Shown here piece after piece: positions 11,561 to 64,000 of a DNA stretch of 64,000 nucleotides. The translations under genes were made by a program, and so were the position numbers. The notes under the pieces are model-generated. The model searched no databases and was not told the origin of the DNA. It was given only the letters and a program-made list of their open reading frames with translations. The stretch comes from Phaeosaccion multiseriatum (Eukaryota > Protista > Ochrophyta, other classes). Within the stretch, counting starts at the first letter, position 1, and the number at the start of each line of letters is the position of its first letter. Where the stretch lies: the NCBI GenBank assembly GCA_965112735.1, contig OZ218954.1, positions 1,736,001-1,800,000 of the forward strand. The letters run 5' to 3'.

Positions 11561-13553
11561 TCAGCCCCTTCCCCAATCATATATTCCCCCCCCTCTTGGT
11601 ACGGGGTACACGTCAAAGCGAAGGGACTTTCCCTTGAGTGAGTGAGACGGAGGGGGGTGTGGCACGATGGGCGGCCCCTTGATGGGGCGCTTCACCACCA
11701 CCTTCACCGTAGCCACCGACATGGCCTTCTCAAACAGGCGGACCTCTTCCTTGGACGAGCCATCAGAAGCGGCGCTGCTGTTCTTGCTCTTGCTCTTCTT
11801 GCGGCGGCGGCTGCTGCTGCTGCTACTGCTGCTGCTACTGCTCTCATCACTACTCTCCATCTCAGCGCCTACCCCGCCAATAGGGCGACTATTCTCTCCG
11901 CGGCCGCTGGTGATGGTGGCTGCGATGCGCTGCAGCAACTGCATATCCTTCTTGACCAACGCAGACGACTTCTTCTTGGTCGCGAACATCGGATCCAGAT
12001 AGGCCACATGGGGCCTCTCCTGCGGGCCAACCACAGCAGCAAAGACATGGCCCCCACCACTACTGGCACTACTACTACTTTTGCTGCTATTGGCACTGCT
12101 ACTACTCCTGCTCCTGCTGCCGCCTTCATCCTCCCCCAGCTCTGCCTCATCACCAGCTTCATCCATCTCCATCGCCCCGTCATAGTCGTATCCTTCCTCA
12201 TGCGGTGCCAAACACGTGGAGTCGCCCAGGCCGACACTCATTCTCCGCGCGGCCTCCTTGGCTCCCACATTGTCTCCCTCTACCGCCCTTCGGAGGGCGT
12301 CACGCACCAACTGCACGACAATGGGAGACCTCTCCGTCATGGCTACTCGGAAACCGGCCGTGGCGAGGACGAAGGCGTCTCTACCGAGGCCTCCGCACAT
12401 GTCCCAAACCAAGCAATCTGTATGTAACGGGGGAGGGGGGGAGGCAGAGACAAGACAGGGTGGGGCTTCCCCTTCAGCTCTAACATCGCTTTCGAGATTG
12501 TGAATACATACTCGCGCCAAGCCGTGTGCCAAACACCAGCAAGCAGCACTAGCACCGCCTGGAACAAGACAAAATATGGTTCTTACGGGCCTGTCCCACC
12601 CATGCGTGCCCCTCTGTTGCCCTTTCGCTCCGCACCTGAGGGTAAGGCGCCTACCGCGGCACTCTTGGAGGGAGTCACGGCTTGCACAATCATTTCCTTT
12701 TGGCGCTGTGCACGGAGTATACCAACACGACAAGGGGGAGAGAGGAAGAGCGAAGGAGGAGGCAGAGCAGAGGGAGGGTTGGACTTCAAGGTACATGCAA
12801 GCACGCACGCATGAGCCCCCGCAGACACATAAGCAGGCTGTGGAGTGATGGTGCAGTAAGCGGGTTTCGGAAGAGGGGGCAGGGGTAGAGGTACGAGGGA
12901 TTGTCACCAAAACGGGTACACACCTGAACTGCCCGGAACGCATGCTTCCCGCCCAGAAAGTCTACCTTCAACGGAGCCAAGGGGGATCCCATACTAGTAC
13001 CGCTCGCGCTTTCTTGTTGCTCCACCACCAGCGCCCCGTCTGCGTCAAAGTACAAGACGAAGTCCAGGTCAAGCGCCGCCGGGCCGGAGGACGCGATGAC
13101 AGCTGAAGACACGCACGGCACCCCCAGAGCACAGGCGAGCGCTGCCTCACTTCCTTCCACTGCTGATCTCCCTTCCCGGCTTCCTTTGCCCTCGTACTGA
13201 GTCTCATCGTACAGTATTGCGACCTTCGCGACTTTTGGGCGCCACACTTGAGGTGATCTACTGCTGCTTTTTCGCTCCTGTGTCTCCGCAGCAGCGTTGT
13301 CTCCAATCTCCTCAGCACTCAGACGAGTTGATGCGGTAGTGCAAGTCGAAAAAGCTCGCCTGTAGTAGGACCGGCCCCATGCCGGGCCCAATGGTGCCCC
13401 TCCTGCTGAAGAGGGCCGTCCTCGCTTTCTGCTGCTGCTCCTGCCATGACTGGCGTTTGCGTATACGCTCGCCCCCTGCTGCCAGGCAACTACCACGGAG
13501 CTTTTCCTACAAATTCGGAGGGTCTGCAGCATTAGCAGCAGCGGCAAACGCAT
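11561..13553 (-). CDS. rsmJ: RsmJ/YhiQ-like SAM-dependent SSU rRNA methyltransferase, probably organelle-targeted, 3 exons
   Basis: VWDMCGGLGRDAFVLA, ERSPIV, YLDPMF...SALVKKDMQ, KVVVKRP, GKSLRFDVY. Exons ~13553-12924, 12705-12636, 12417-11561. The start could be the upstream ATG near 13620. Confidence 0.85.
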
Positions 13554-13862
13554 CCCCTCTGAGGGGGGGAGGATCCATCCCCGAGCAACCGACATTTGTG
13601 AGGCCCAACCACCGTCCATTTTTTCATTTTTCTCACACGCTGCCCGCTTCCCCCCCCAAAGCAATGCTATACACACTGGCAAAGCAACGGAACTCTAAAA
13701 CTATCTAATTATTTAATTTATAAAGTAACAAGCCTGACAAATCTATGGCGACTGTAAGTAGCTGGGGGAGCTCGACACAAGACGACAAGGCAGGCAATGC
13801 TCCCTCTCTCTGCTCCCCCCTCCCTGCCCCACACGTCCGCCGCTACAAACCCTCTTCCCTCT

Positions 13863-13955: not shown

Positions 13956-16018
13956 TCAACAGAAGGTTTTCGTCGCCAGCGTGGCCATCCTCTCCCGGAA
14001 GGAGCGGCGCTGCTCTCGCAAGTGGGTACGGAAGGCCCCGTCACGGTCGAATACCTGTACGGGAAGGGAAGGGAAGAGCAGCGGGGCAGATGGTTGGTAA
14101 ACGGCAAGGTCGAGGGCGGCAGAACAGAAAAGAGGAGAGAGAGAGAGAGAGAGAGGGAAAGAATGGCGAAGCGCAGTCAGGCGATGCCCGGCCTATCCAT
14201 GTGTCAGGGGATAAAGGGCCGGTGGGCTGCCCCCCCCCCCCCCCCTTCCCCCGCCGGCCACCCCCCGGGCCAACCGTCCCCCCTCCACACGCACACGTAT
14301 GCACACGCACGCACACACACACGCACCTTGATGAAGCCCTGCTGCATCTCAGACAGCTGGTTCTCCTTAAAGAAGTCGATGCCCCTCTCCACTTTGGAGG
14401 TGAGCTTGTCGGTGAGCTTGTCCTTGAGCATGGCCGTGCGGATGCGCCCCTCCGTGACCTTGCTCACGTTGAGCTCCTTGGCGCTGTAGCCTCGTTCCAA
14501 ATTGCGGCGGACGAAGTTGTCGTAGTCTTGGATGATCACTGCACAGCATAGCATCAGTCAGCCAGATATGGCATCAGCCAGTCAGCCAGTCGGCCCATCA
14601 ATCAATTAATCAATGTGTGATGAGCGCAAGGAGGGGGGGAGGGAAAGTGAGCGGGAGAAGTGAGCCGTCCAATATCCATCAATCCACCTTCGCCAGTTTC
14701 CACCTCCTTCTCCTCCTCCTCCTCCTCCTCCTCCTCCTCCTCCTCCTCCTCCTCCTCCTCCTGCTGCTGCTGCTGCTGCTGCTCGTCGTCCCCCACTCAC
14801 TTGCGATAATGTCGCTGGTGGAGATGCCCTCCGTCCTCTCTGTCTCAGCGAAGCGCCCCTTGCGCTTGAGATGCAGATACACGTCCCCATCCTCGGCGTT
14901 TCCACTCGAGTCCCCATAGGGCAGCGCATCGTGACACACAAAGTCAATCTGATGCCGCTCCATAAACTCATCCGTCACCACCCACGGGGCATCTTCCACG
15001 ACAGCGTCCACCCACTTGCAGTGCTTTAGGGACTCGTAGCGCTGGTCCTCACGCATCACCGTCTGGCCCTTGTACCTGCCGGTGTCGTGTGGTACGGTGT
15101 GGTGTGGTGTAGTGTGTGTACGAGAGTGTATATGTAAGGACCAGGGAGCAGGGGCATCGTATGACAGTCATGTACAGTGTTGGACAAAGAATCAGGAGCA
15201 GCAATTGTGAGTAGGTGTGCAAACAATAATTTCAGTCCACGAGAGCAACCACAGCCCCGTCCCACTCGCCCTGCCCCTCTTGCTCATGCTCCTGGTCTGT
15301 GACAAGCCCGTACTGATGACTAAGCGCTTGCTCTCCAGCACCCTCTCTTTCTCCCAAATCACCTGTGCGTCATTTCATCGCTGCAGCAGCCCACGAGCAG
15401 GTAGCTATTTGGAAAGGTCTTCTTGGCCTGCTCTAGCGCCTTGGCGTGCCCGTAGTGGAACAGGTCAAAGATTCCATCTGCATACAGCCGCATTGGTCGG
15501 CCCGTCTTGGTACCGGGGGCGCCTTCCTCCATCCGAGAGATGTCTGGCTTGTAGCTGGAAGGCTGGTACTTGCAGAGCGTCTCTACTCTGTCCGTGCCTT
15601 CTTGGTGCTCCGGCACGTCGAGTACTTCATTGGGCAGGAGCTCCTCGGCCGGGTCAAAGTTATCGCCGCTGCTCCCACTATCACCCACGTCTTCCCCCCT
15701 CCCCTCCCCTGCCTTTGGTGATGCTGCTCCTGCACCCCGACCCTCTCCCTTACCGCCGGACGTGTTGGCCCTTTTTGCCGGAGGGGGGTGGTCTCCATTC
15801 TGCTGCTCCTCTAGCTCCGGCTCTGTCCCTTCCGCTGCTTTCGCTGCGGCCCTAGCCGCTGCCGCTGTCCCATTGGCCTTCGCTCCCCCTACTCTTGACT
15901 CCTGGGGCGATCCTGCTGCTGGTGCCTCTGTTCCTGATGCCCTTCCTCCTCCATTTGCGGTCTCCTTCTTTCCCTGCGGCTCCCTCCCCCGCTTTCCGCT
16001 GCCGCCATTGTTTGGCAT
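13956..16018 (-). CDS. CCT: CTP:phosphocholine cytidylyltransferase, 4 exons
   Basis: [15 protein letters not shown] (HxGH), [45 protein letters not shown]; last exon VFDRDG...KTFC*. Confidence 0.93.
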
Positions 16019-16149
16019 GGCCCTCCTCGGTTGGCACGATGAGCCAAGCCCCCTACAGATTTGGGATCACACGCCCACGAACGCGGACCTTCGGATGGCA
16101 GTCAACGGGACGATGCCTTTATTCTTTATTCAAAGAGGAGAAGACGATA

Positions 16150-17761
16150 ATGTTGCGCCTTCGGCGATGGACTCCGCCTCCTTCCACGCTTGTCTTCCTC
16201 TCTCTCGGTCTTGTCCTCACGCTCTTCTTGGCGCCAGCAGAGGGAGGGTGGTCTTCTTCTCCTGGGCTTCTGGCACGAGGACAATCCTCGGTGGACCGGG
16301 ATGGAGATGGCAGCAGCATCAGCGGTACCGATGCCTGGACTGCTGCTGCTACCTTTCAATCTTCAACGTCCCGTGCGCGGGGTCGAAAGCGGGCCCTGCA
16401 GCTGAGGGGGGGCAGCACGGCGGAGGAGAAGTACTCTTTCAGCTTGACCGCGTTCAGCCCCAAGGGAAGCCTTCCTCAGCTGGAGTATGCTCTCAACGCA
16501 GTGTCGGTGAGTCCAGAACATAGAAAGAGGGAAGAGAGAGGCAGTGAGGGCGGAGATGAAGGGCGTGCATAGCCTCTTAACATCATTCCCATTCTCTCGC
16601 CCCCCCCCTCTTTCCATCCCCCCCCCCCCCCTCCTTAATGCTCTCTACACCAGAGAGGCACTCTGTCTCTGGCTATCAAGTACAAGGGAGGCGTGGTCCT
16701 GGCTTCCCCCAACAGGGCCCACGGCTCGCCCCTGGTGCGGGAGAGTGGCACCAAGAAGATCACGCACATTTCGGAGAGCATCGCGCTCTGTTACGCAGGT
16801 GAGCGAGCCACAGCGAGCGCTTGCGGTGACTAGCCTTGAATACATCAGTGAATGCCGGTACCCCATCCTTCGTGGTGCTGGACTGGATCAAGCGGAAGAA
16901 GCCCCCCCTCAATGGGTGTACACTGATTTGTTTGCTTGCTGTACGCAAAGATGTGTCGCCAATCGCCGCCTTCACCCGACCCTCCCTCTCCCTTCCTAAC
17001 CCCCCCCCCCACCCCCCCAAACTCCCTCAAAAGGTTTGGCCGCGGATTCGAGGGTATTGGCGGCCAATGCACAGAGCTTTTGCTTGGCTCACGAGGAGAA
17101 GTTCGGGAAGGAAGGAGCGTCTCCCTTCCGAGCGCTGACCGAGGAGCTCGCCTCCACGATGCAGCAGCACACACAGATGGGCGGCGTGAGGCCCTTTGGG
17201 GTCAGCCTTCTCGTCGCTGGCGTGGAGGATGATGGTGATGATGATGAGGAGGAGGATGAGGAGGCGGATGAAGAGGAGGAGGAGGAGGAGGAGGAGGAGG
17301 AGGAGGAGGAGGAGGAGGAGGAGGAGGCCGAGGATGGCACGCTACAAGGGCGAAAGGAAGAGGGGGCACCACCACCGAAGGAGGGGATAAATGCAGCCAC
17401 CGCAGTACGAGGGGCAGCGAGCAGGAGGCAAGGCAAGGGCAAGGCAACAGTGTTTCTGGTACAGCCATCCGGCCACGTCTCCCCGTGGAACGCAGTAGCC
17501 ATAGGGCAGCGCAGCGGAGAGGCGGAACGCTTCCTCGAGAGCAAATGGCGCCCCGGCATGGGACGGGACCAGGCCGTGCAGATGGCAATTGACGTGGTGA
17601 TGGACCTCGCCAAGGAGGAGGGGCATGTGAAGAAGGCGGAGCACATCGACGTGGCGTGTGTCGAGCTTGGACGTATCATTAACCAGCCCCACCTCAGTAG
17701 TGGTGGTGGTGGTGGTGGTGGTGTTGGTGGTGGTGGTGCCGAAGGAGGAGAGGGAGAGTGA
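16150..17761 (+). CDS. 20S proteasome alpha-2-like subunit with N-terminal signal peptide and presequence (putative periplastid paralogue), 3 exons
   Basis: YSFSLTAFSPKGSLPQLEYALNAV, GTLSLAIKYKGGVVLA, MQQHTQMGGVRPFGVSLLVAG, VQPSGHVSPWNAVAIG. Exons 16150-16506, 16654-16798, 17034-17761. Hydrophobic leader LVFLSLGLVLTLFLAPAEG; poly-D/E insertion. Confidence 0.88.
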
Positions 17762-62561: not shown

Positions 62562-63123
62562 ATGAAGTCCTCCATACGGGAACCACTCCTCCTCCTCCTC
62601 CTCCTCGTCGTCATCGCGGGCAACTTCGCCGTCGTCTGCAGTCAGAGGTCTTCATCCTTCAACACGTACGCAGCATCAGGGGCAGGAGGGGGAGGACTCG
62701 CCATCGCCATTGGCAGCTCGCTTCCACATCCTCTGGATCACGACGAGGCGCGATACAGCAGCAGCAGCAGCAGCAGTAGTAGTAGCGGGAAGGCCTCTGT
62801 GACGCGCCATCCCCTCTTCCTCCTCCGTGGTGGTGGTGGCGGTGACGGCGGAGCACCGAGAAGCGGAGAGGGCCAGTACCTACCGCCTCACAACGACCCT
62901 AGACTCAAGGCCGTGGTCGCTTCTCTCTCCACGGCCAAGGCCAGGCCGGGCACGGAGAGCAAGCCTTGGTGGGAGGAGACGAGGAGGGGTCGCGGGTCCG
63001 GGCCTTCCTTTCCGGTGACACAGTCACCGCAGGCTCAGCCATCGCTGCTAACACAGCCCTCCACAGCTGACGTCGGCGAGCCCTGGTGGGAAGAAGGCGG
63101 CGGGAAGGCAGCAAAAGGGAGAC

Positions 63124-63163
<40 letters not shown>

Positions 63164-64000
63164 GTCTCTCGCTGCTCGGCAGCAAGCTACCGCAAACGCG
63201 TGGTGGTGCGGCGGCGTGAGCAGTCGCGGCAAAGGAGGGGGTGGTGGTTTAAGCTCCCTTGGCAGCACCCCGACTGCGGCACTCCTGTTGGCCCTGGCCG
63301 CCCCTGCTCTGGTCATAGTCCTCTCGAACTCGGACACAGACTTCGCTGCCGCAGGGCAGAGAGAGAAGGAGAAGGAGCGGAAGCAGAAGCAAAAGCAAAA
63401 GCAGAGAGCTGCTGCAGCAGCAGTGGCAGAAAGCCAGTCAGCGGCACTAGAAAAGGCGAAAGCAAAGGCGGCACAGAGCAGGGCGGCCGAAAGCCAGGCA
63501 GCGGCTCAAGCACGGACCAAGGCAAAGGCGACGCAGAGCAAGGCAGTAGCAGTGGCAGCAGTGCAAGCGGAGAAGGTCCGAGCGGCGGCTGCAAAGCAGT
63601 CCAAGGCCCCAAAGGCCAAGAAAGCCCCCCCTGCCCCCAAGAAGCAGCAGCAGACGCAACGCCCCCCCCCTGCCTCGGCCTTCTCCAAGCCTGTGCCGAC
63701 TCCCTCTGCCGTCAAGAAAATGAGTCCGAAAAGCAAGGCTCGACCTCTATCCCCCCAGGGGAAAGCGCTGAAGGTAAGGAAGGGACCGAACTGATACACT
63801 CCCCGTAATATTGTATCAACCCCCCTCTCCCTACATGATTTGGTGTATAGTCGGCACCCTCCCTCTCTGCCCCCCCACCCGTGCATCTGCTTATTGCGTT
63901 GCTCTCTTCGTCCCCTCCCGTACGGTATCTGCTCCCTCCCCCCGCCCCTCTGAGCAGCACCAATCCGACCTGCGCACAGGGGCCACTCTGCTGGCGGCCG
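62562..64000 (+). CDS. Hypothetical membrane protein with signal peptide, LRGG motif, TM helix and Ala/Lys-rich stalk; runs off the window
   Basis: [27 protein letters not shown] leader, LFLLRGG, AALLLALAAPALVIVL; donor AAG|GTAAGG near 63774. Confidence 0.7.

What the first reader, a model, noticed from the sequence alone, without database searches (positions are those of the whole stretch)
16150..16450. Proteasome alpha subunit with a signal peptide and a ubiquitin-like LRGG exactly at the presequence/mature boundary
Seen: hydrophobic signal peptide, ~50-aa S/T/R-rich linker, then LQLRGG (LRGG at 16402-16413) directly followed by STAEEKYSFSLT, which aligns with the natural start of alpha-2 subunits. 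Known: LRGG is the ubiquitin C-terminus cleaved by deubiquitinases, and complex red plastids keep ERAD-derived (SELMA) machinery and some symbiont-type 20S subunits in the periplastid compartment. Inference: a relict symbiont proteasome subunit matured by a DUB-like protease acting as presequence peptidase.
Basis: partly seen in the sequence, partly recalled or inferred. Interest (0 to 1): 0.72.

Follow-up and report, generated by a model that had tools for sequence, protein, structure and literature searches.

The report
Periplastid-type proteasome alpha-2 with LRGG leader end
This gene encodes a second, signal-peptide-bearing copy of proteasome subunit alpha-2 of the kind heterokont algae send to the space around their plastid. 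Its removable leader ends in the last residues of ubiquitin (LRGG), a feature conserved in distant relatives that gives a testable clue to the unknown enzyme that trims such leaders.

Summary
A three-exon gene (16150-17761, +) encodes a 409-aa alpha-2-type 20S subunit. It carries an 88-aa leader: a signal-peptide-like start, a 55-aa Ser/Thr/Arg-rich spacer, then LQLRGG. The alpha-2 N-terminus follows directly.

A signal-peptide-bearing alpha-2 is not new. Moog et al. 2011 predicted periplastid alpha-2 in Phaeodactylum and localised other 20S subunits there.

An exhaustive search found about 30 such proteins. With leaders removed they form one clade (SH-aLRT 98), separate from canonical alpha-2.

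I found the hydrophobic-x-[LI]-R-G-G motif in no paper. It lies 3-7 residues before the core Tyr in at least five divergent lineages, including Tribonema minus (LRLRGG) and MMETSP transcripts. The rest of the leader is not conserved between these lineages.

The motif goes with a spacer. All 10 leaders that have it show 20-64 aa between the hydrophobic region and the core. The 21 without it show 3-20 aa.

My best reading is that the motif is a second processing site that removes the spacer, probably cut by a DUB/ULP-like protease. This is inferred, not shown. There is no ubiquitin fold upstream, no RNA or proteomic data, and red-algal origin is unresolved. Other first-reader notes on this genome report LRGG-ended leaders on two more proteins; I could not check them.

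The parts
16150..16506 (+). Exon 1 (119 codons): the leader (aa 1-88) plus the alpha-2 N-terminal signature (aa 89-119).
   Evidence: Proteasome_A_N at aa 95-117. A GTGAGT donor begins at 16507.
16150..16236 (+). Signal-peptide-like segment (aa 1-29): a basic n-region, a 17-aa uncharged h-region, and an A-P-A c-region followed by Glu, which is not aromatic.
   Evidence: Hydropathy and rule-based reading. No SignalP was available.
16237..16395 (+). Spacer (aa 30-82): rich in S, T, G and R, transit-peptide-like and low in complexity. It is not conserved in relatives.
   Evidence: Pfam finds no domain here.
16396..16413 (+). LQLRGG (aa 83-88). It matches the ubiquitin tail pattern hydrophobic-x-L-R-G-G and is the proposed second processing site (after Gly88).
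   Evidence: for the coordinates. Conservation in orthologues is shown.
16507..16653 (+). Intron 1 (147 nt, GT..AG) with a C-rich tract before the acceptor.
16654..16798 (+). Exon 2, part of the proteasome domain.
   Evidence: PF00227, E 1.9e-08.
16799..17033 (+). Intron 2 (235 nt, GT..AG) with a C-rich tract before the acceptor.
17034..17761 (+). Exon 3: the rest of the proteasome domain, an acidic poly-Glu loop insert (about 17219-17338), a Gly-rich tail and the stop codon.
   Evidence: PF00227, E 1.9e-22. Relatives carry an insert at the same site.
16019..16149 (.). A 131-bp spacer between the divergent start codons of the cytidylyltransferase gene (-) and alpha-2 (+). It is presumably a bidirectional promoter with both 5' UTRs.
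   Evidence: The same gene pair occurs in metagenome contigs L004 and L006.

Best explanation
The gene encodes the periplastid-type (SELMA-era) paralogue of 20S proteasome subunit alpha-2 of a heterokont (ochrophyte) alga.

Proposed route, all inferred: the protein enters the ER through an N-terminal signal peptide, which signal peptidase removes near Ala29. The Ser/Thr/Arg-rich spacer then acts as the transit-peptide-like part that carries it across the periplastid membrane.

The conserved hydrophobic-x-[LI]-R-G-G at the end of the spacer is a second processing site. Cleavage after Gly88 would remove the spacer and leave a six-residue tail before the core Tyr. That is the length an alpha-2 N-terminus needs to sit in the gate of the alpha ring.

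The motif copies the last six residues of ubiquitin, and the periplastid space contains a ubiquitin system with a deubiquitinase. The most likely cutter is therefore a cysteine protease of DUB or ULP type that reads a linear LRGG.

Shown: gene structure, alpha-2 identity, leader architecture, family monophyly, conservation of the motif and its co-occurrence with a spacer. Inferred: location, cleavage and the identity of the protease.
For: 1. Alpha-2 identity. Pfam hits. The best PDB matches are all 'alpha type-2', at 190-207 bits against about 162 for alpha-3. The protein falls inside the alpha-2 clade.

2. A separate paralogue family. All 29 signal-peptide-bearing alpha-2 rows form one clade, SH-aLRT 98, with leaders left out of the alignment. 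Canonical alpha-2, including a diatom's own (P0142, Epithemia), forms another clade, also 98.

3. Literature. [quoted passage not shown] The peptidase that removes the transit-peptide-like (TPL) part of periplastid leaders is postulated but not identified (PMC5756292). ptDUP, with a bipartite leader, is present in stramenopiles.

4. Motif conservation:
- window LQLRGG;
- P0001 and P0003 VQLRGG;
- P0015 AQLRGG;
- P0004 LLRGG;
- Tribonema minus P0132 LRLRGG, identical to the ubiquitin tail (ubiquitin sequence from my knowledge);
- MMETSP transcript P0136 LSIRGG;
- P0215 LKLRGG;
- weaker forms: P0214 PRGG and P0002 LLGG.
The motif is always 3-7 aa before the core Tyr. Spacers differ in length (12-55 aa) and in sequence.

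5. Orthology. The same divergent cytidylyltransferase neighbour occurs in L004 and L006, 82% identical over 77 aa, while alpha-2 itself is only about 47% identical.

6. Spacer and motif go together. The distance from the hydrophobic region to the core is 20-64 aa in the 10 leaders with the motif and 3-20 aa in the 21 without.

7. Chance per leader is 2e-4 to 2e-3.

8. The leader is disordered in the AlphaFold2 model of the Tribonema protein, while the core has pLDDT above 90.

9. P1' residues are S, A, D or E and never Pro.
Against: - There is no ubiquitin or UBL fold before the LRGG. USP-type DUBs such as ptDUP (Ubp15/UBP12-13-like) cut bare LRGG peptides only poorly (my knowledge).
- Two thirds of the family (21 of 31) lack the motif, so it is not essential to the family.
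- On the tree the trait needs at least four changes. The spacer/motif link therefore rests on few independent events.
- P0214 (PRGG) and P0002 (LLGG, inside the signal peptide's c-region) loosen the consensus.
- There is no transcript, N-terminal proteomic or localisation data for this organism. The only public runs are DNA.
- The signal peptide was judged by rules, not by a trained predictor.
- In the P0001 clade one possible signal-peptidase site would leave Phe at +1, which in heterokonts is the stromal signal, not the periplastid one.
Confidence: 0.5

Rival explanations
1. The motif is a processing site, but it is cut by a protease unrelated to deubiquitinases. Candidates are the postulated periplastid peptidase that removes the transit-peptide-like (TPL) part of the leader, or the periplastid proteasome itself: its trypsin-like beta-2 could cut after the Arg once the leader threads into the pore. 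On this reading the likeness to the ubiquitin tail is convergent or coincidental.
For: A TPL peptidase is postulated for all periplastid proteins and is unidentified. Beta-2 is among the periplastid subunits of diatoms. There is no ubiquitin fold for a DUB to grip. Arg is the best conserved non-Gly residue.
Against: Six positions follow the ubiquitin tail pattern, and the Tribonema sequence is identical to it. That is more than a simple basic-residue site needs. No other known presequence peptidase has this consensus (my knowledge).
Confidence: 0.22
2. The motif is not cleaved. It is a conserved recognition element of the leader or of an extended mature N-terminus. For example, it could be bound by SELMA or ubiquitin-handling factors during import, or it could act at the gate of a cap-less 20S particle.
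For: Conservation alone does not show cleavage. The periplastid 20S has no 19S cap, so gating could be unusual. Ubiquitin-binding factors sit at the translocon.
Against: The motif always lies 3-7 aa before the core Tyr, which reproduces the native tail length. Family members without a spacer have their signal-peptide cleavage site at the same distance. That argues for selection on the position of the new N-terminus. A 20-60 aa disordered tail at the pore would be odd for an alpha-ring subunit.
Confidence: 0.15
3. The extension is not translated, or the motif is a chance product of GC-rich, Arg/Gly-rich sequence: a gene-model artefact.
For: LRGG is at chance frequency in the six-frame translation (12 against 10 expected). 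Long open frames are common at 60% GC. There is no RNA evidence.
Against: There is no in-frame ATG between 16150 and the core. Intronless orthologues and MMETSP transcripts carry the same signal peptide, spacer and RGG architecture in one ORF. Chance per leader is at most 2e-3, and the motif occurs in at least five lineages.
Confidence: 0.04

Closest known systems
Periplastid (PPC) 20S proteasome subunits of diatoms, s-alpha2 among them (Moog et al. 2011, PMC3101018)
   Same: A nucleus-encoded extra copy of a 20S core subunit with an N-terminal ER signal peptide. It is found in heterokonts, is a separate paralogue from the host subunit, and has no 19S partners reported.
   Different: Many family members have the signal peptide abutting the mature protein (groups B and C; probably the diatom-like ones, but these rows carry no taxon label). 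Here there is a 55-aa spacer ending in LQLRGG. I found that motif described in no paper. Localisation of this protein is not tested.
Ubiquitin and UBL precursors processed at ...LRGG by DUBs or ULPs (ubiquitin-ribosomal protein fusions, NEDD8, ISG15)
   Same: The residues before the cut are the same (LRLRGG in Tribonema, LQLRGG here), a functional protein follows directly, and P1' is never Pro.
   Different: There is no beta-grasp domain before the tail. What would be discarded is a targeting leader, not a UBL that goes on to be used.
Linear LXGG or (M/I/L)XGG cleavage by papain-like or CE-clan viral proteases (coronavirus PLpro, adenain); my knowledge
   Same: A short linear motif with hydrophobic P4 and Gly-Gly at P2-P1 is enough for cleavage without a ubiquitin body. 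This shows that such a specificity exists.
   Different: Those are viral polyprotein or maturation proteases. No cellular periplastid enzyme of this kind is known.
Propeptides of proteasome beta subunits
   Same: An N-terminal extension of a 20S subunit is removed to give the functional N-terminus, and a Gly lies at P1.
   Different: Beta propeptides are removed autocatalytically at Gly-Thr1 inside the particle. Alpha subunits have no active site and normally no propeptide.

Membership tests
20S proteasome subunit alpha type-2 (PSMA2 / Pre8 / Y7) | Proteasome alpha N-terminal signature followed by the Ntn-hydrolase proteasome domain | tested here: met
   PF10584 matches aa 95-117 (27.4 bits; cut-off 27.7 for exon 1 alone). 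PF00227 matches exons 2 and 3 (E 1.9e-08 and 1.9e-22).
20S proteasome subunit alpha type-2 (PSMA2 / Pre8 / Y7) | Closer to alpha-2 than to the other six alpha types | tested here: met
   The PDB profile search puts alpha type-2 chains on top at 190-207 bits; alpha-3 scores about 162. The protein lies inside the alpha-2 clade, support 100.
Periplastid (symbiont-specific) 20S subunits of heterokonts | N-terminal bipartite leader: ER signal peptide plus a transit-peptide-like stretch, with a non-aromatic residue at +1 | tested here: inconclusive
   The basic n-region, 17-aa h-region, A-P-A then Glu, and a net-positive S/T-rich spacer all fit. This is a rule-based reading only; SignalP, ASAFind and HECTAR were not available.
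Periplastid (symbiont-specific) 20S subunits of heterokonts | A paralogue distinct from the host's cytosolic subunit | tested here: met
   The signal-peptide-bearing alpha-2 clade (98) is separate from the canonical clade (98), which holds a diatom canonical alpha-2. A canonical copy in this very genome could not be looked for.
Periplastid (symbiont-specific) 20S subunits of heterokonts | Localisation in the periplastid compartment | not testable with these tools
   GFP data exist only for other subunits, in Phaeodactylum.
Periplastid (symbiont-specific) 20S subunits of heterokonts | Red-algal (symbiont) ancestry | tested here: inconclusive
   The clade is not nested in red algae in the free tree. 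A constrained clade of signal-peptide-bearing alpha-2 plus red algae is not rejected, and its likelihood was 13.3 log units higher than that of the quick free tree (AU p 0.656).
Ubiquitin / ubiquitin-like precursor | Beta-grasp (ubiquitin) fold ending in the LRGG tail | tested here: not met
   Pfam finds no ubiquitin-family hit in exon 1. The leader is disordered in the AlphaFold2 model of the Tribonema orthologue. Spacers are as short as 12 aa in relatives.
Ubiquitin / ubiquitin-like precursor | Cleavage after Gly-Gly by a DUB or ULP | not testable with these tools
   The motif is present and conserved. No proteomic or biochemical data are available.

The most novel reading that the evidence does not exclude
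In this lineage, and perhaps in many ochrophytes, leaders of periplastid-resident proteins in general end in a ubiquitin-tail mimic (hydrophobic-x-L-R-G-G). On this reading the long-sought peptidase that removes the transit-peptide-like (TPL) part of periplastid leaders is a deubiquitinase-like enzyme. The enzyme class that strips ubiquitin from imported preproteins would then also clip off the ubiquitinated leader in one cut.

Leads, none of them checked here:
- First-reader notes on the same genome report LRGG-ended leaders on a BiP-type Hsp70 (s1-342316) and on a signal-peptide, UBL and transmembrane protein (s1-342281).
- This window holds a second ORF (62562-63794) with a signal peptide, a Ser-rich spacer and LFLLRGG at aa 85-91.
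- A 2007 paper notes LRGGG in the N-terminal region of the Phaeodactylum and Cyanidioschyzon Omp85.

Within this window alone the enrichment is not significant: 2 found against 1.3 expected.
Probability: 0.25. Interest if true: 0.82.

Novelty: new variant of a known kind. Interest (0 to 1): 0.6.

Why it matters
How proteins that stay in the periplastid compartment lose their transit-peptide-like (TPL) leader is an open point in models of SELMA-dependent import. A TPL peptidase is drawn in the schemes, but none has been identified (PMC5756292).

This finding offers a conserved, position-fixed copy of the ubiquitin C-terminus at the leader/mature junction of a periplastid proteasome subunit, and the motif is present only where a spacer has to be removed. 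That gives a concrete cleavage site and a concrete enzyme class to test.

If confirmed, it would tie the ubiquitin machinery of the translocon to presequence removal. It would also give a sequence rule for predicting mature N-termini of periplastid proteins.

If only the family assignment holds, this is one more member of the known heterokont periplastid proteasome.

Tried and rejected
- **RNA evidence.** The four public runs that hold the stretch are DNA: contigs run through both introns at even depth and show no splice joints. The transcript start could not be tested.
- **Word search with exon 3**. It was swamped by the poly-Glu stretch but did give the first orthologues.
- **Word search with P0001**. 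Beyond its own clade it found only canonical alpha-2.
- **ORF 62562-63794.** There is no Pfam hit and no homologue by word search, so its LRGG-ended leader stays an anecdote.
- **ORF 13379-13708 (+).** It has a signal-peptide-like start and PLRGG at about aa 61-65. I rejected it as probably spurious because it lies antisense to the 5' ORF adjoining the SAM-methyltransferase gene.
- **Enrichment within the window.** Among 75 signal-peptide-like M-starts, [LIVMF]RGG was found twice against 1.3 expected, which is not significant.
- **Flanks of orthologous metagenome loci** (L001, L004, L006). No further ORF combines a signal peptide with the motif.
- **Taxon labels.** Most family members have none; only Tribonema, Phaeothamnion and Chrysoparadoxa are named.
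- **A degenerate ubiquitin domain in the spacer.** Rejected.
- **GC3 as a coding test.** Not discriminating in this genome.
- **Global identity of the leaders**. The figures are inflated by gapping and were not used.

Full report
**What is in the sequence**

The frame opening at ATG 16150 (+) reads through a basic start (MLRLRR) and a 17-residue uncharged hydrophobic run that ends in A-P-A. A stretch of about 55 residues rich in Ser, Thr, Gly and Arg follows, and then LQLRGG, with LRGG at 16402-16413. STAEEK-YSFSLT comes next.

With GT..AG introns at 16507-16653 and 16799-17033, the gene gives a 409-aa protein. The exon joins are seamless against intronless orthologues.

Pfam finds the alpha-subunit N-terminal signature at residues 95-117 and the proteasome domain in exons 2 and 3. 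A family profile hits solved 'alpha type-2' chains first, at 190-207 bits, against about 162 for alpha-3. The native Met1 of those chains aligns three profile positions after the GG.

**Is the leader translated?**

- The upstream neighbour is a cytidylyltransferase gene on the minus strand. Its ATG is at 16018, only 131 bp from 16150.
- The only other in-frame ATGs, 15937 and 16039, lie inside or beside that gene. None lies between 16150 and the alpha-2 core.
- No RNA run of this organism is public. The four runs that hold the stretch are DNA.
- Support therefore comes from relatives. Metagenome proteins P0001, P0003, P0004 and P0015 and the Tribonema protein P0132 carry a signal peptide, a spacer and the RGG motif in one ORF; P0001 and P0015 were confirmed as single continuous (intronless) ORFs on their contigs. 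Two MMETSP transcript-derived proteins (P0136 and the P0214 cluster) show the same architecture.

**What family it belongs to**

Moog et al. [quoted passage not shown] No 19S cap was found. [quoted passage not shown] Cavalier-Smith 2017 (PMC5756292) lists periplastid proteasomes for heterokonts and cryptophytes only.

An exhaustive profile search of 1.84 billion representatives returned about 30 alpha-2 proteins with a hydrophobic N-terminal extension. Named members are:

- Tribonema minus (Xanthophyceae);
- Phaeothamnion confervicola;
- Chrysoparadoxa australica.

In a tree built with the leaders removed, all 29 such rows form one clade (SH-aLRT 98). Canonical alpha-2 of animals, fungi, plants, red algae and a diatom (P0142, Epithemia) forms another clade, also 98.

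The window's protein is nearest to the Phaeothamnion, P0015 and P0002 proteins. Orthology with the P0001 and P0015 group is backed by microsynteny: the same divergent cytidylyltransferase gene lies upstream in L004 and L006, 82% identical over 77 aa.

Red-algal origin is not resolved. The clade does not nest in red algae in the free tree. Forcing it together with red algae is not rejected, and that search even found a better likelihood (AU p 0.656).

**The LRGG motif**

Taken alone, LRGG is at chance frequency in this GC-rich window: 12 six-frame hits against 10 expected. What is not chance is its place and its conservation.

| Protein | Residues before the cut |
|---|---|
| window | LQLRGG |
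| P0001, P0003 | VQLRGG |
| P0015 | AQLRGG |
| P0004 | LLRGG |
| Tribonema P0132 | LRLRGG (the exact ubiquitin tail; ubiquitin sequence from my knowledge) |
| P0136 | LSIRGG |
| P0215 | LKLRGG |
| P0214 | PRGG (weaker form) |
| P0002 | LLGG (weaker form) |

The Gly-Gly always lies 3-7 residues before the core Tyr. Canonical alpha-2 has 4-5 residues there.

Spacers range from 12 to 55 aa and share no other conserved element. Shuffling each spacer puts [LI]RGG in that position in 2e-4 to 2e-3 of trials.

The motif occurs on both sides of the deepest split of the signal-peptide-bearing alpha-2 clade and needs at least four changes on the tree.

It goes with a spacer. The 10 leaders that have it show 20-64 aa between the end of the hydrophobic region and the core Tyr. 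The 21 without it show 3-20 aa (Mann-Whitney p 1e-5, not corrected for phylogeny). In those 21, signal peptidase alone would already produce a native-length N-terminus.

**Mechanism**

The simplest reading is that the motif marks a second cut that removes the spacer after import and restores an alpha-2 N-terminus of the right length for the alpha ring.

The periplastid space contains its own ubiquitin, E1, E2 and E3 enzymes, Cdc48, and a deubiquitinase, ptDUP. ptDUP is a Ubp15/UBP12-13-type USP present with a bipartite leader in stramenopiles. The peptidase that removes the transit-peptide-like (TPL) part of periplastid leaders is still only postulated. An LRGG-reading cysteine protease is thus the obvious candidate.

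Against ptDUP itself:

- There is no ubiquitin fold upstream. Pfam finds none.
- The AlphaFold2 model of the Tribonema protein has a confident alpha-subunit core (pLDDT above 90) but a disordered leader that includes RLRGG.
- USP-type enzymes cut bare LRGG peptides only weakly (my knowledge).

Enzymes that read a linear LXGG do exist, such as PLpro and adenain-like CE-clan proteases (my knowledge), so the specificity is feasible.

Alternatives are a different TPL peptidase, trimming by the proteasome's own trypsin-like site after the Arg, or an uncleaved recognition element. The fixed distance to the core Tyr argues for selection on where the new N-terminus lies, and so for cleavage.

**Generality**

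- another alpha and two beta subunits with signal peptides;
- a BiP-type Hsp70 whose bipartite leader ends in LRGG;
- a signal-peptide, RLRGG, UBL and transmembrane protein.

In this window, ORF 62562-63794 has a clear signal peptide, a Ser-rich spacer and LFLLRGG at residues 85-91. It has no Pfam hit and no homologue. The in-window enrichment is not significant. A 2007 paper remarks on LRGGG in the N-terminal region of the Phaeodactylum and Cyanidioschyzon Omp85.

A general rule is therefore a lead, not a result.

**Novelty**

The signal-peptide-bearing alpha-2 is a new member of a known kind. I found the ubiquitin-tail motif at the leader end in no paper:

- 'LRGG' with 'periplastid' returned nothing.
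- A search for SELMA, deubiquitinase, transit peptide and cleavage returned two papers, neither listed for this motif; I read only Cavalier-Smith 2017, which does not mention it.
- 'LRGG' had zero occurrences in the top 15 of 3,148 papers ranked for LRGG and plastid, diatom and related terms.
- 'LRGG' with 'Phaeodactylum' returned only the Omp85 remark.

The library covers open-access papers only. I rate the finding a new variant of a known kind, of moderate to good interest, because it makes the TPL-peptidase question testable.

Noticed in passing
window 62562-63794 (+): A 410-aa ATG ORF with a strong signal peptide (poly-Leu h-region), a Ser/Gly-rich spacer, LFLLRGG at aa 85-91, repeated WWEE-like motifs, one predicted transmembrane segment near aa 245-262 and a Lys/Ala-rich tail. 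Its leader has the same architecture as the alpha-2 leader. It has no Pfam hit and no homologues.
   Followed up: partly
window 14204-16018 (-), with L004:668-1351 and L006:7579-8310: A choline-phosphate-cytidylyltransferase-like gene lies head to head with alpha-2, with 131 bp between the two ATGs. The gene pair is conserved in metagenome contigs of relatives. The cytidylyltransferase is 82% identical there, while alpha-2 is only about 47% identical, so the periplastid-type alpha-2 evolves fast.
   Followed up: partly
P0131, P0133, P0220, P0230, P0273 and others (groups B and C): Two thirds of the signal-peptide-bearing alpha-2 proteins have the signal peptide abutting the mature N-terminus, often before a conserved [DE]-G-R-[YH]-S-F-S-L-T-T-F, with no transit-peptide-like spacer. 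How these would cross the periplastid membrane is unclear.
   Followed up: no
window 16600-16633 and 16999-17020: Long C-rich tracts lie just upstream of both 3' splice sites of the alpha-2 gene. Depth spikes and loose ends in the DNA runs show that such tracts are repeated in the genome.
   Followed up: no
window 17219-17338 and 17687-17751: In-frame (GAG)n and (GGT)n microsatellites encode a poly-Glu loop insert and a poly-Gly tail in alpha-2. Relatives also carry a disordered insert at the same loop: about 80 aa in Tribonema and about 20 aa in the P0001 clade.
   Followed up: partly
window 13379-13708 (+): A 109-aa ORF with a hydrophobic start and PLRGG at about aa 61-65. It lies antisense to ORF 12786-13682, which adjoins the SAM-methyltransferase (PF04445) gene at 11561-12943 (-) and is probably its 5' exon. 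The ORF is probably spurious.
   Followed up: partly
literature, PMC2222254: Wunder et al. 2007 remark that the Omp85 homologues of Phaeodactylum and Cyanidioschyzon carry an LRGGG motif in their N-terminal soluble region. This may be relevant to the idea of LRGG as a leader-end motif.
   Followed up: no
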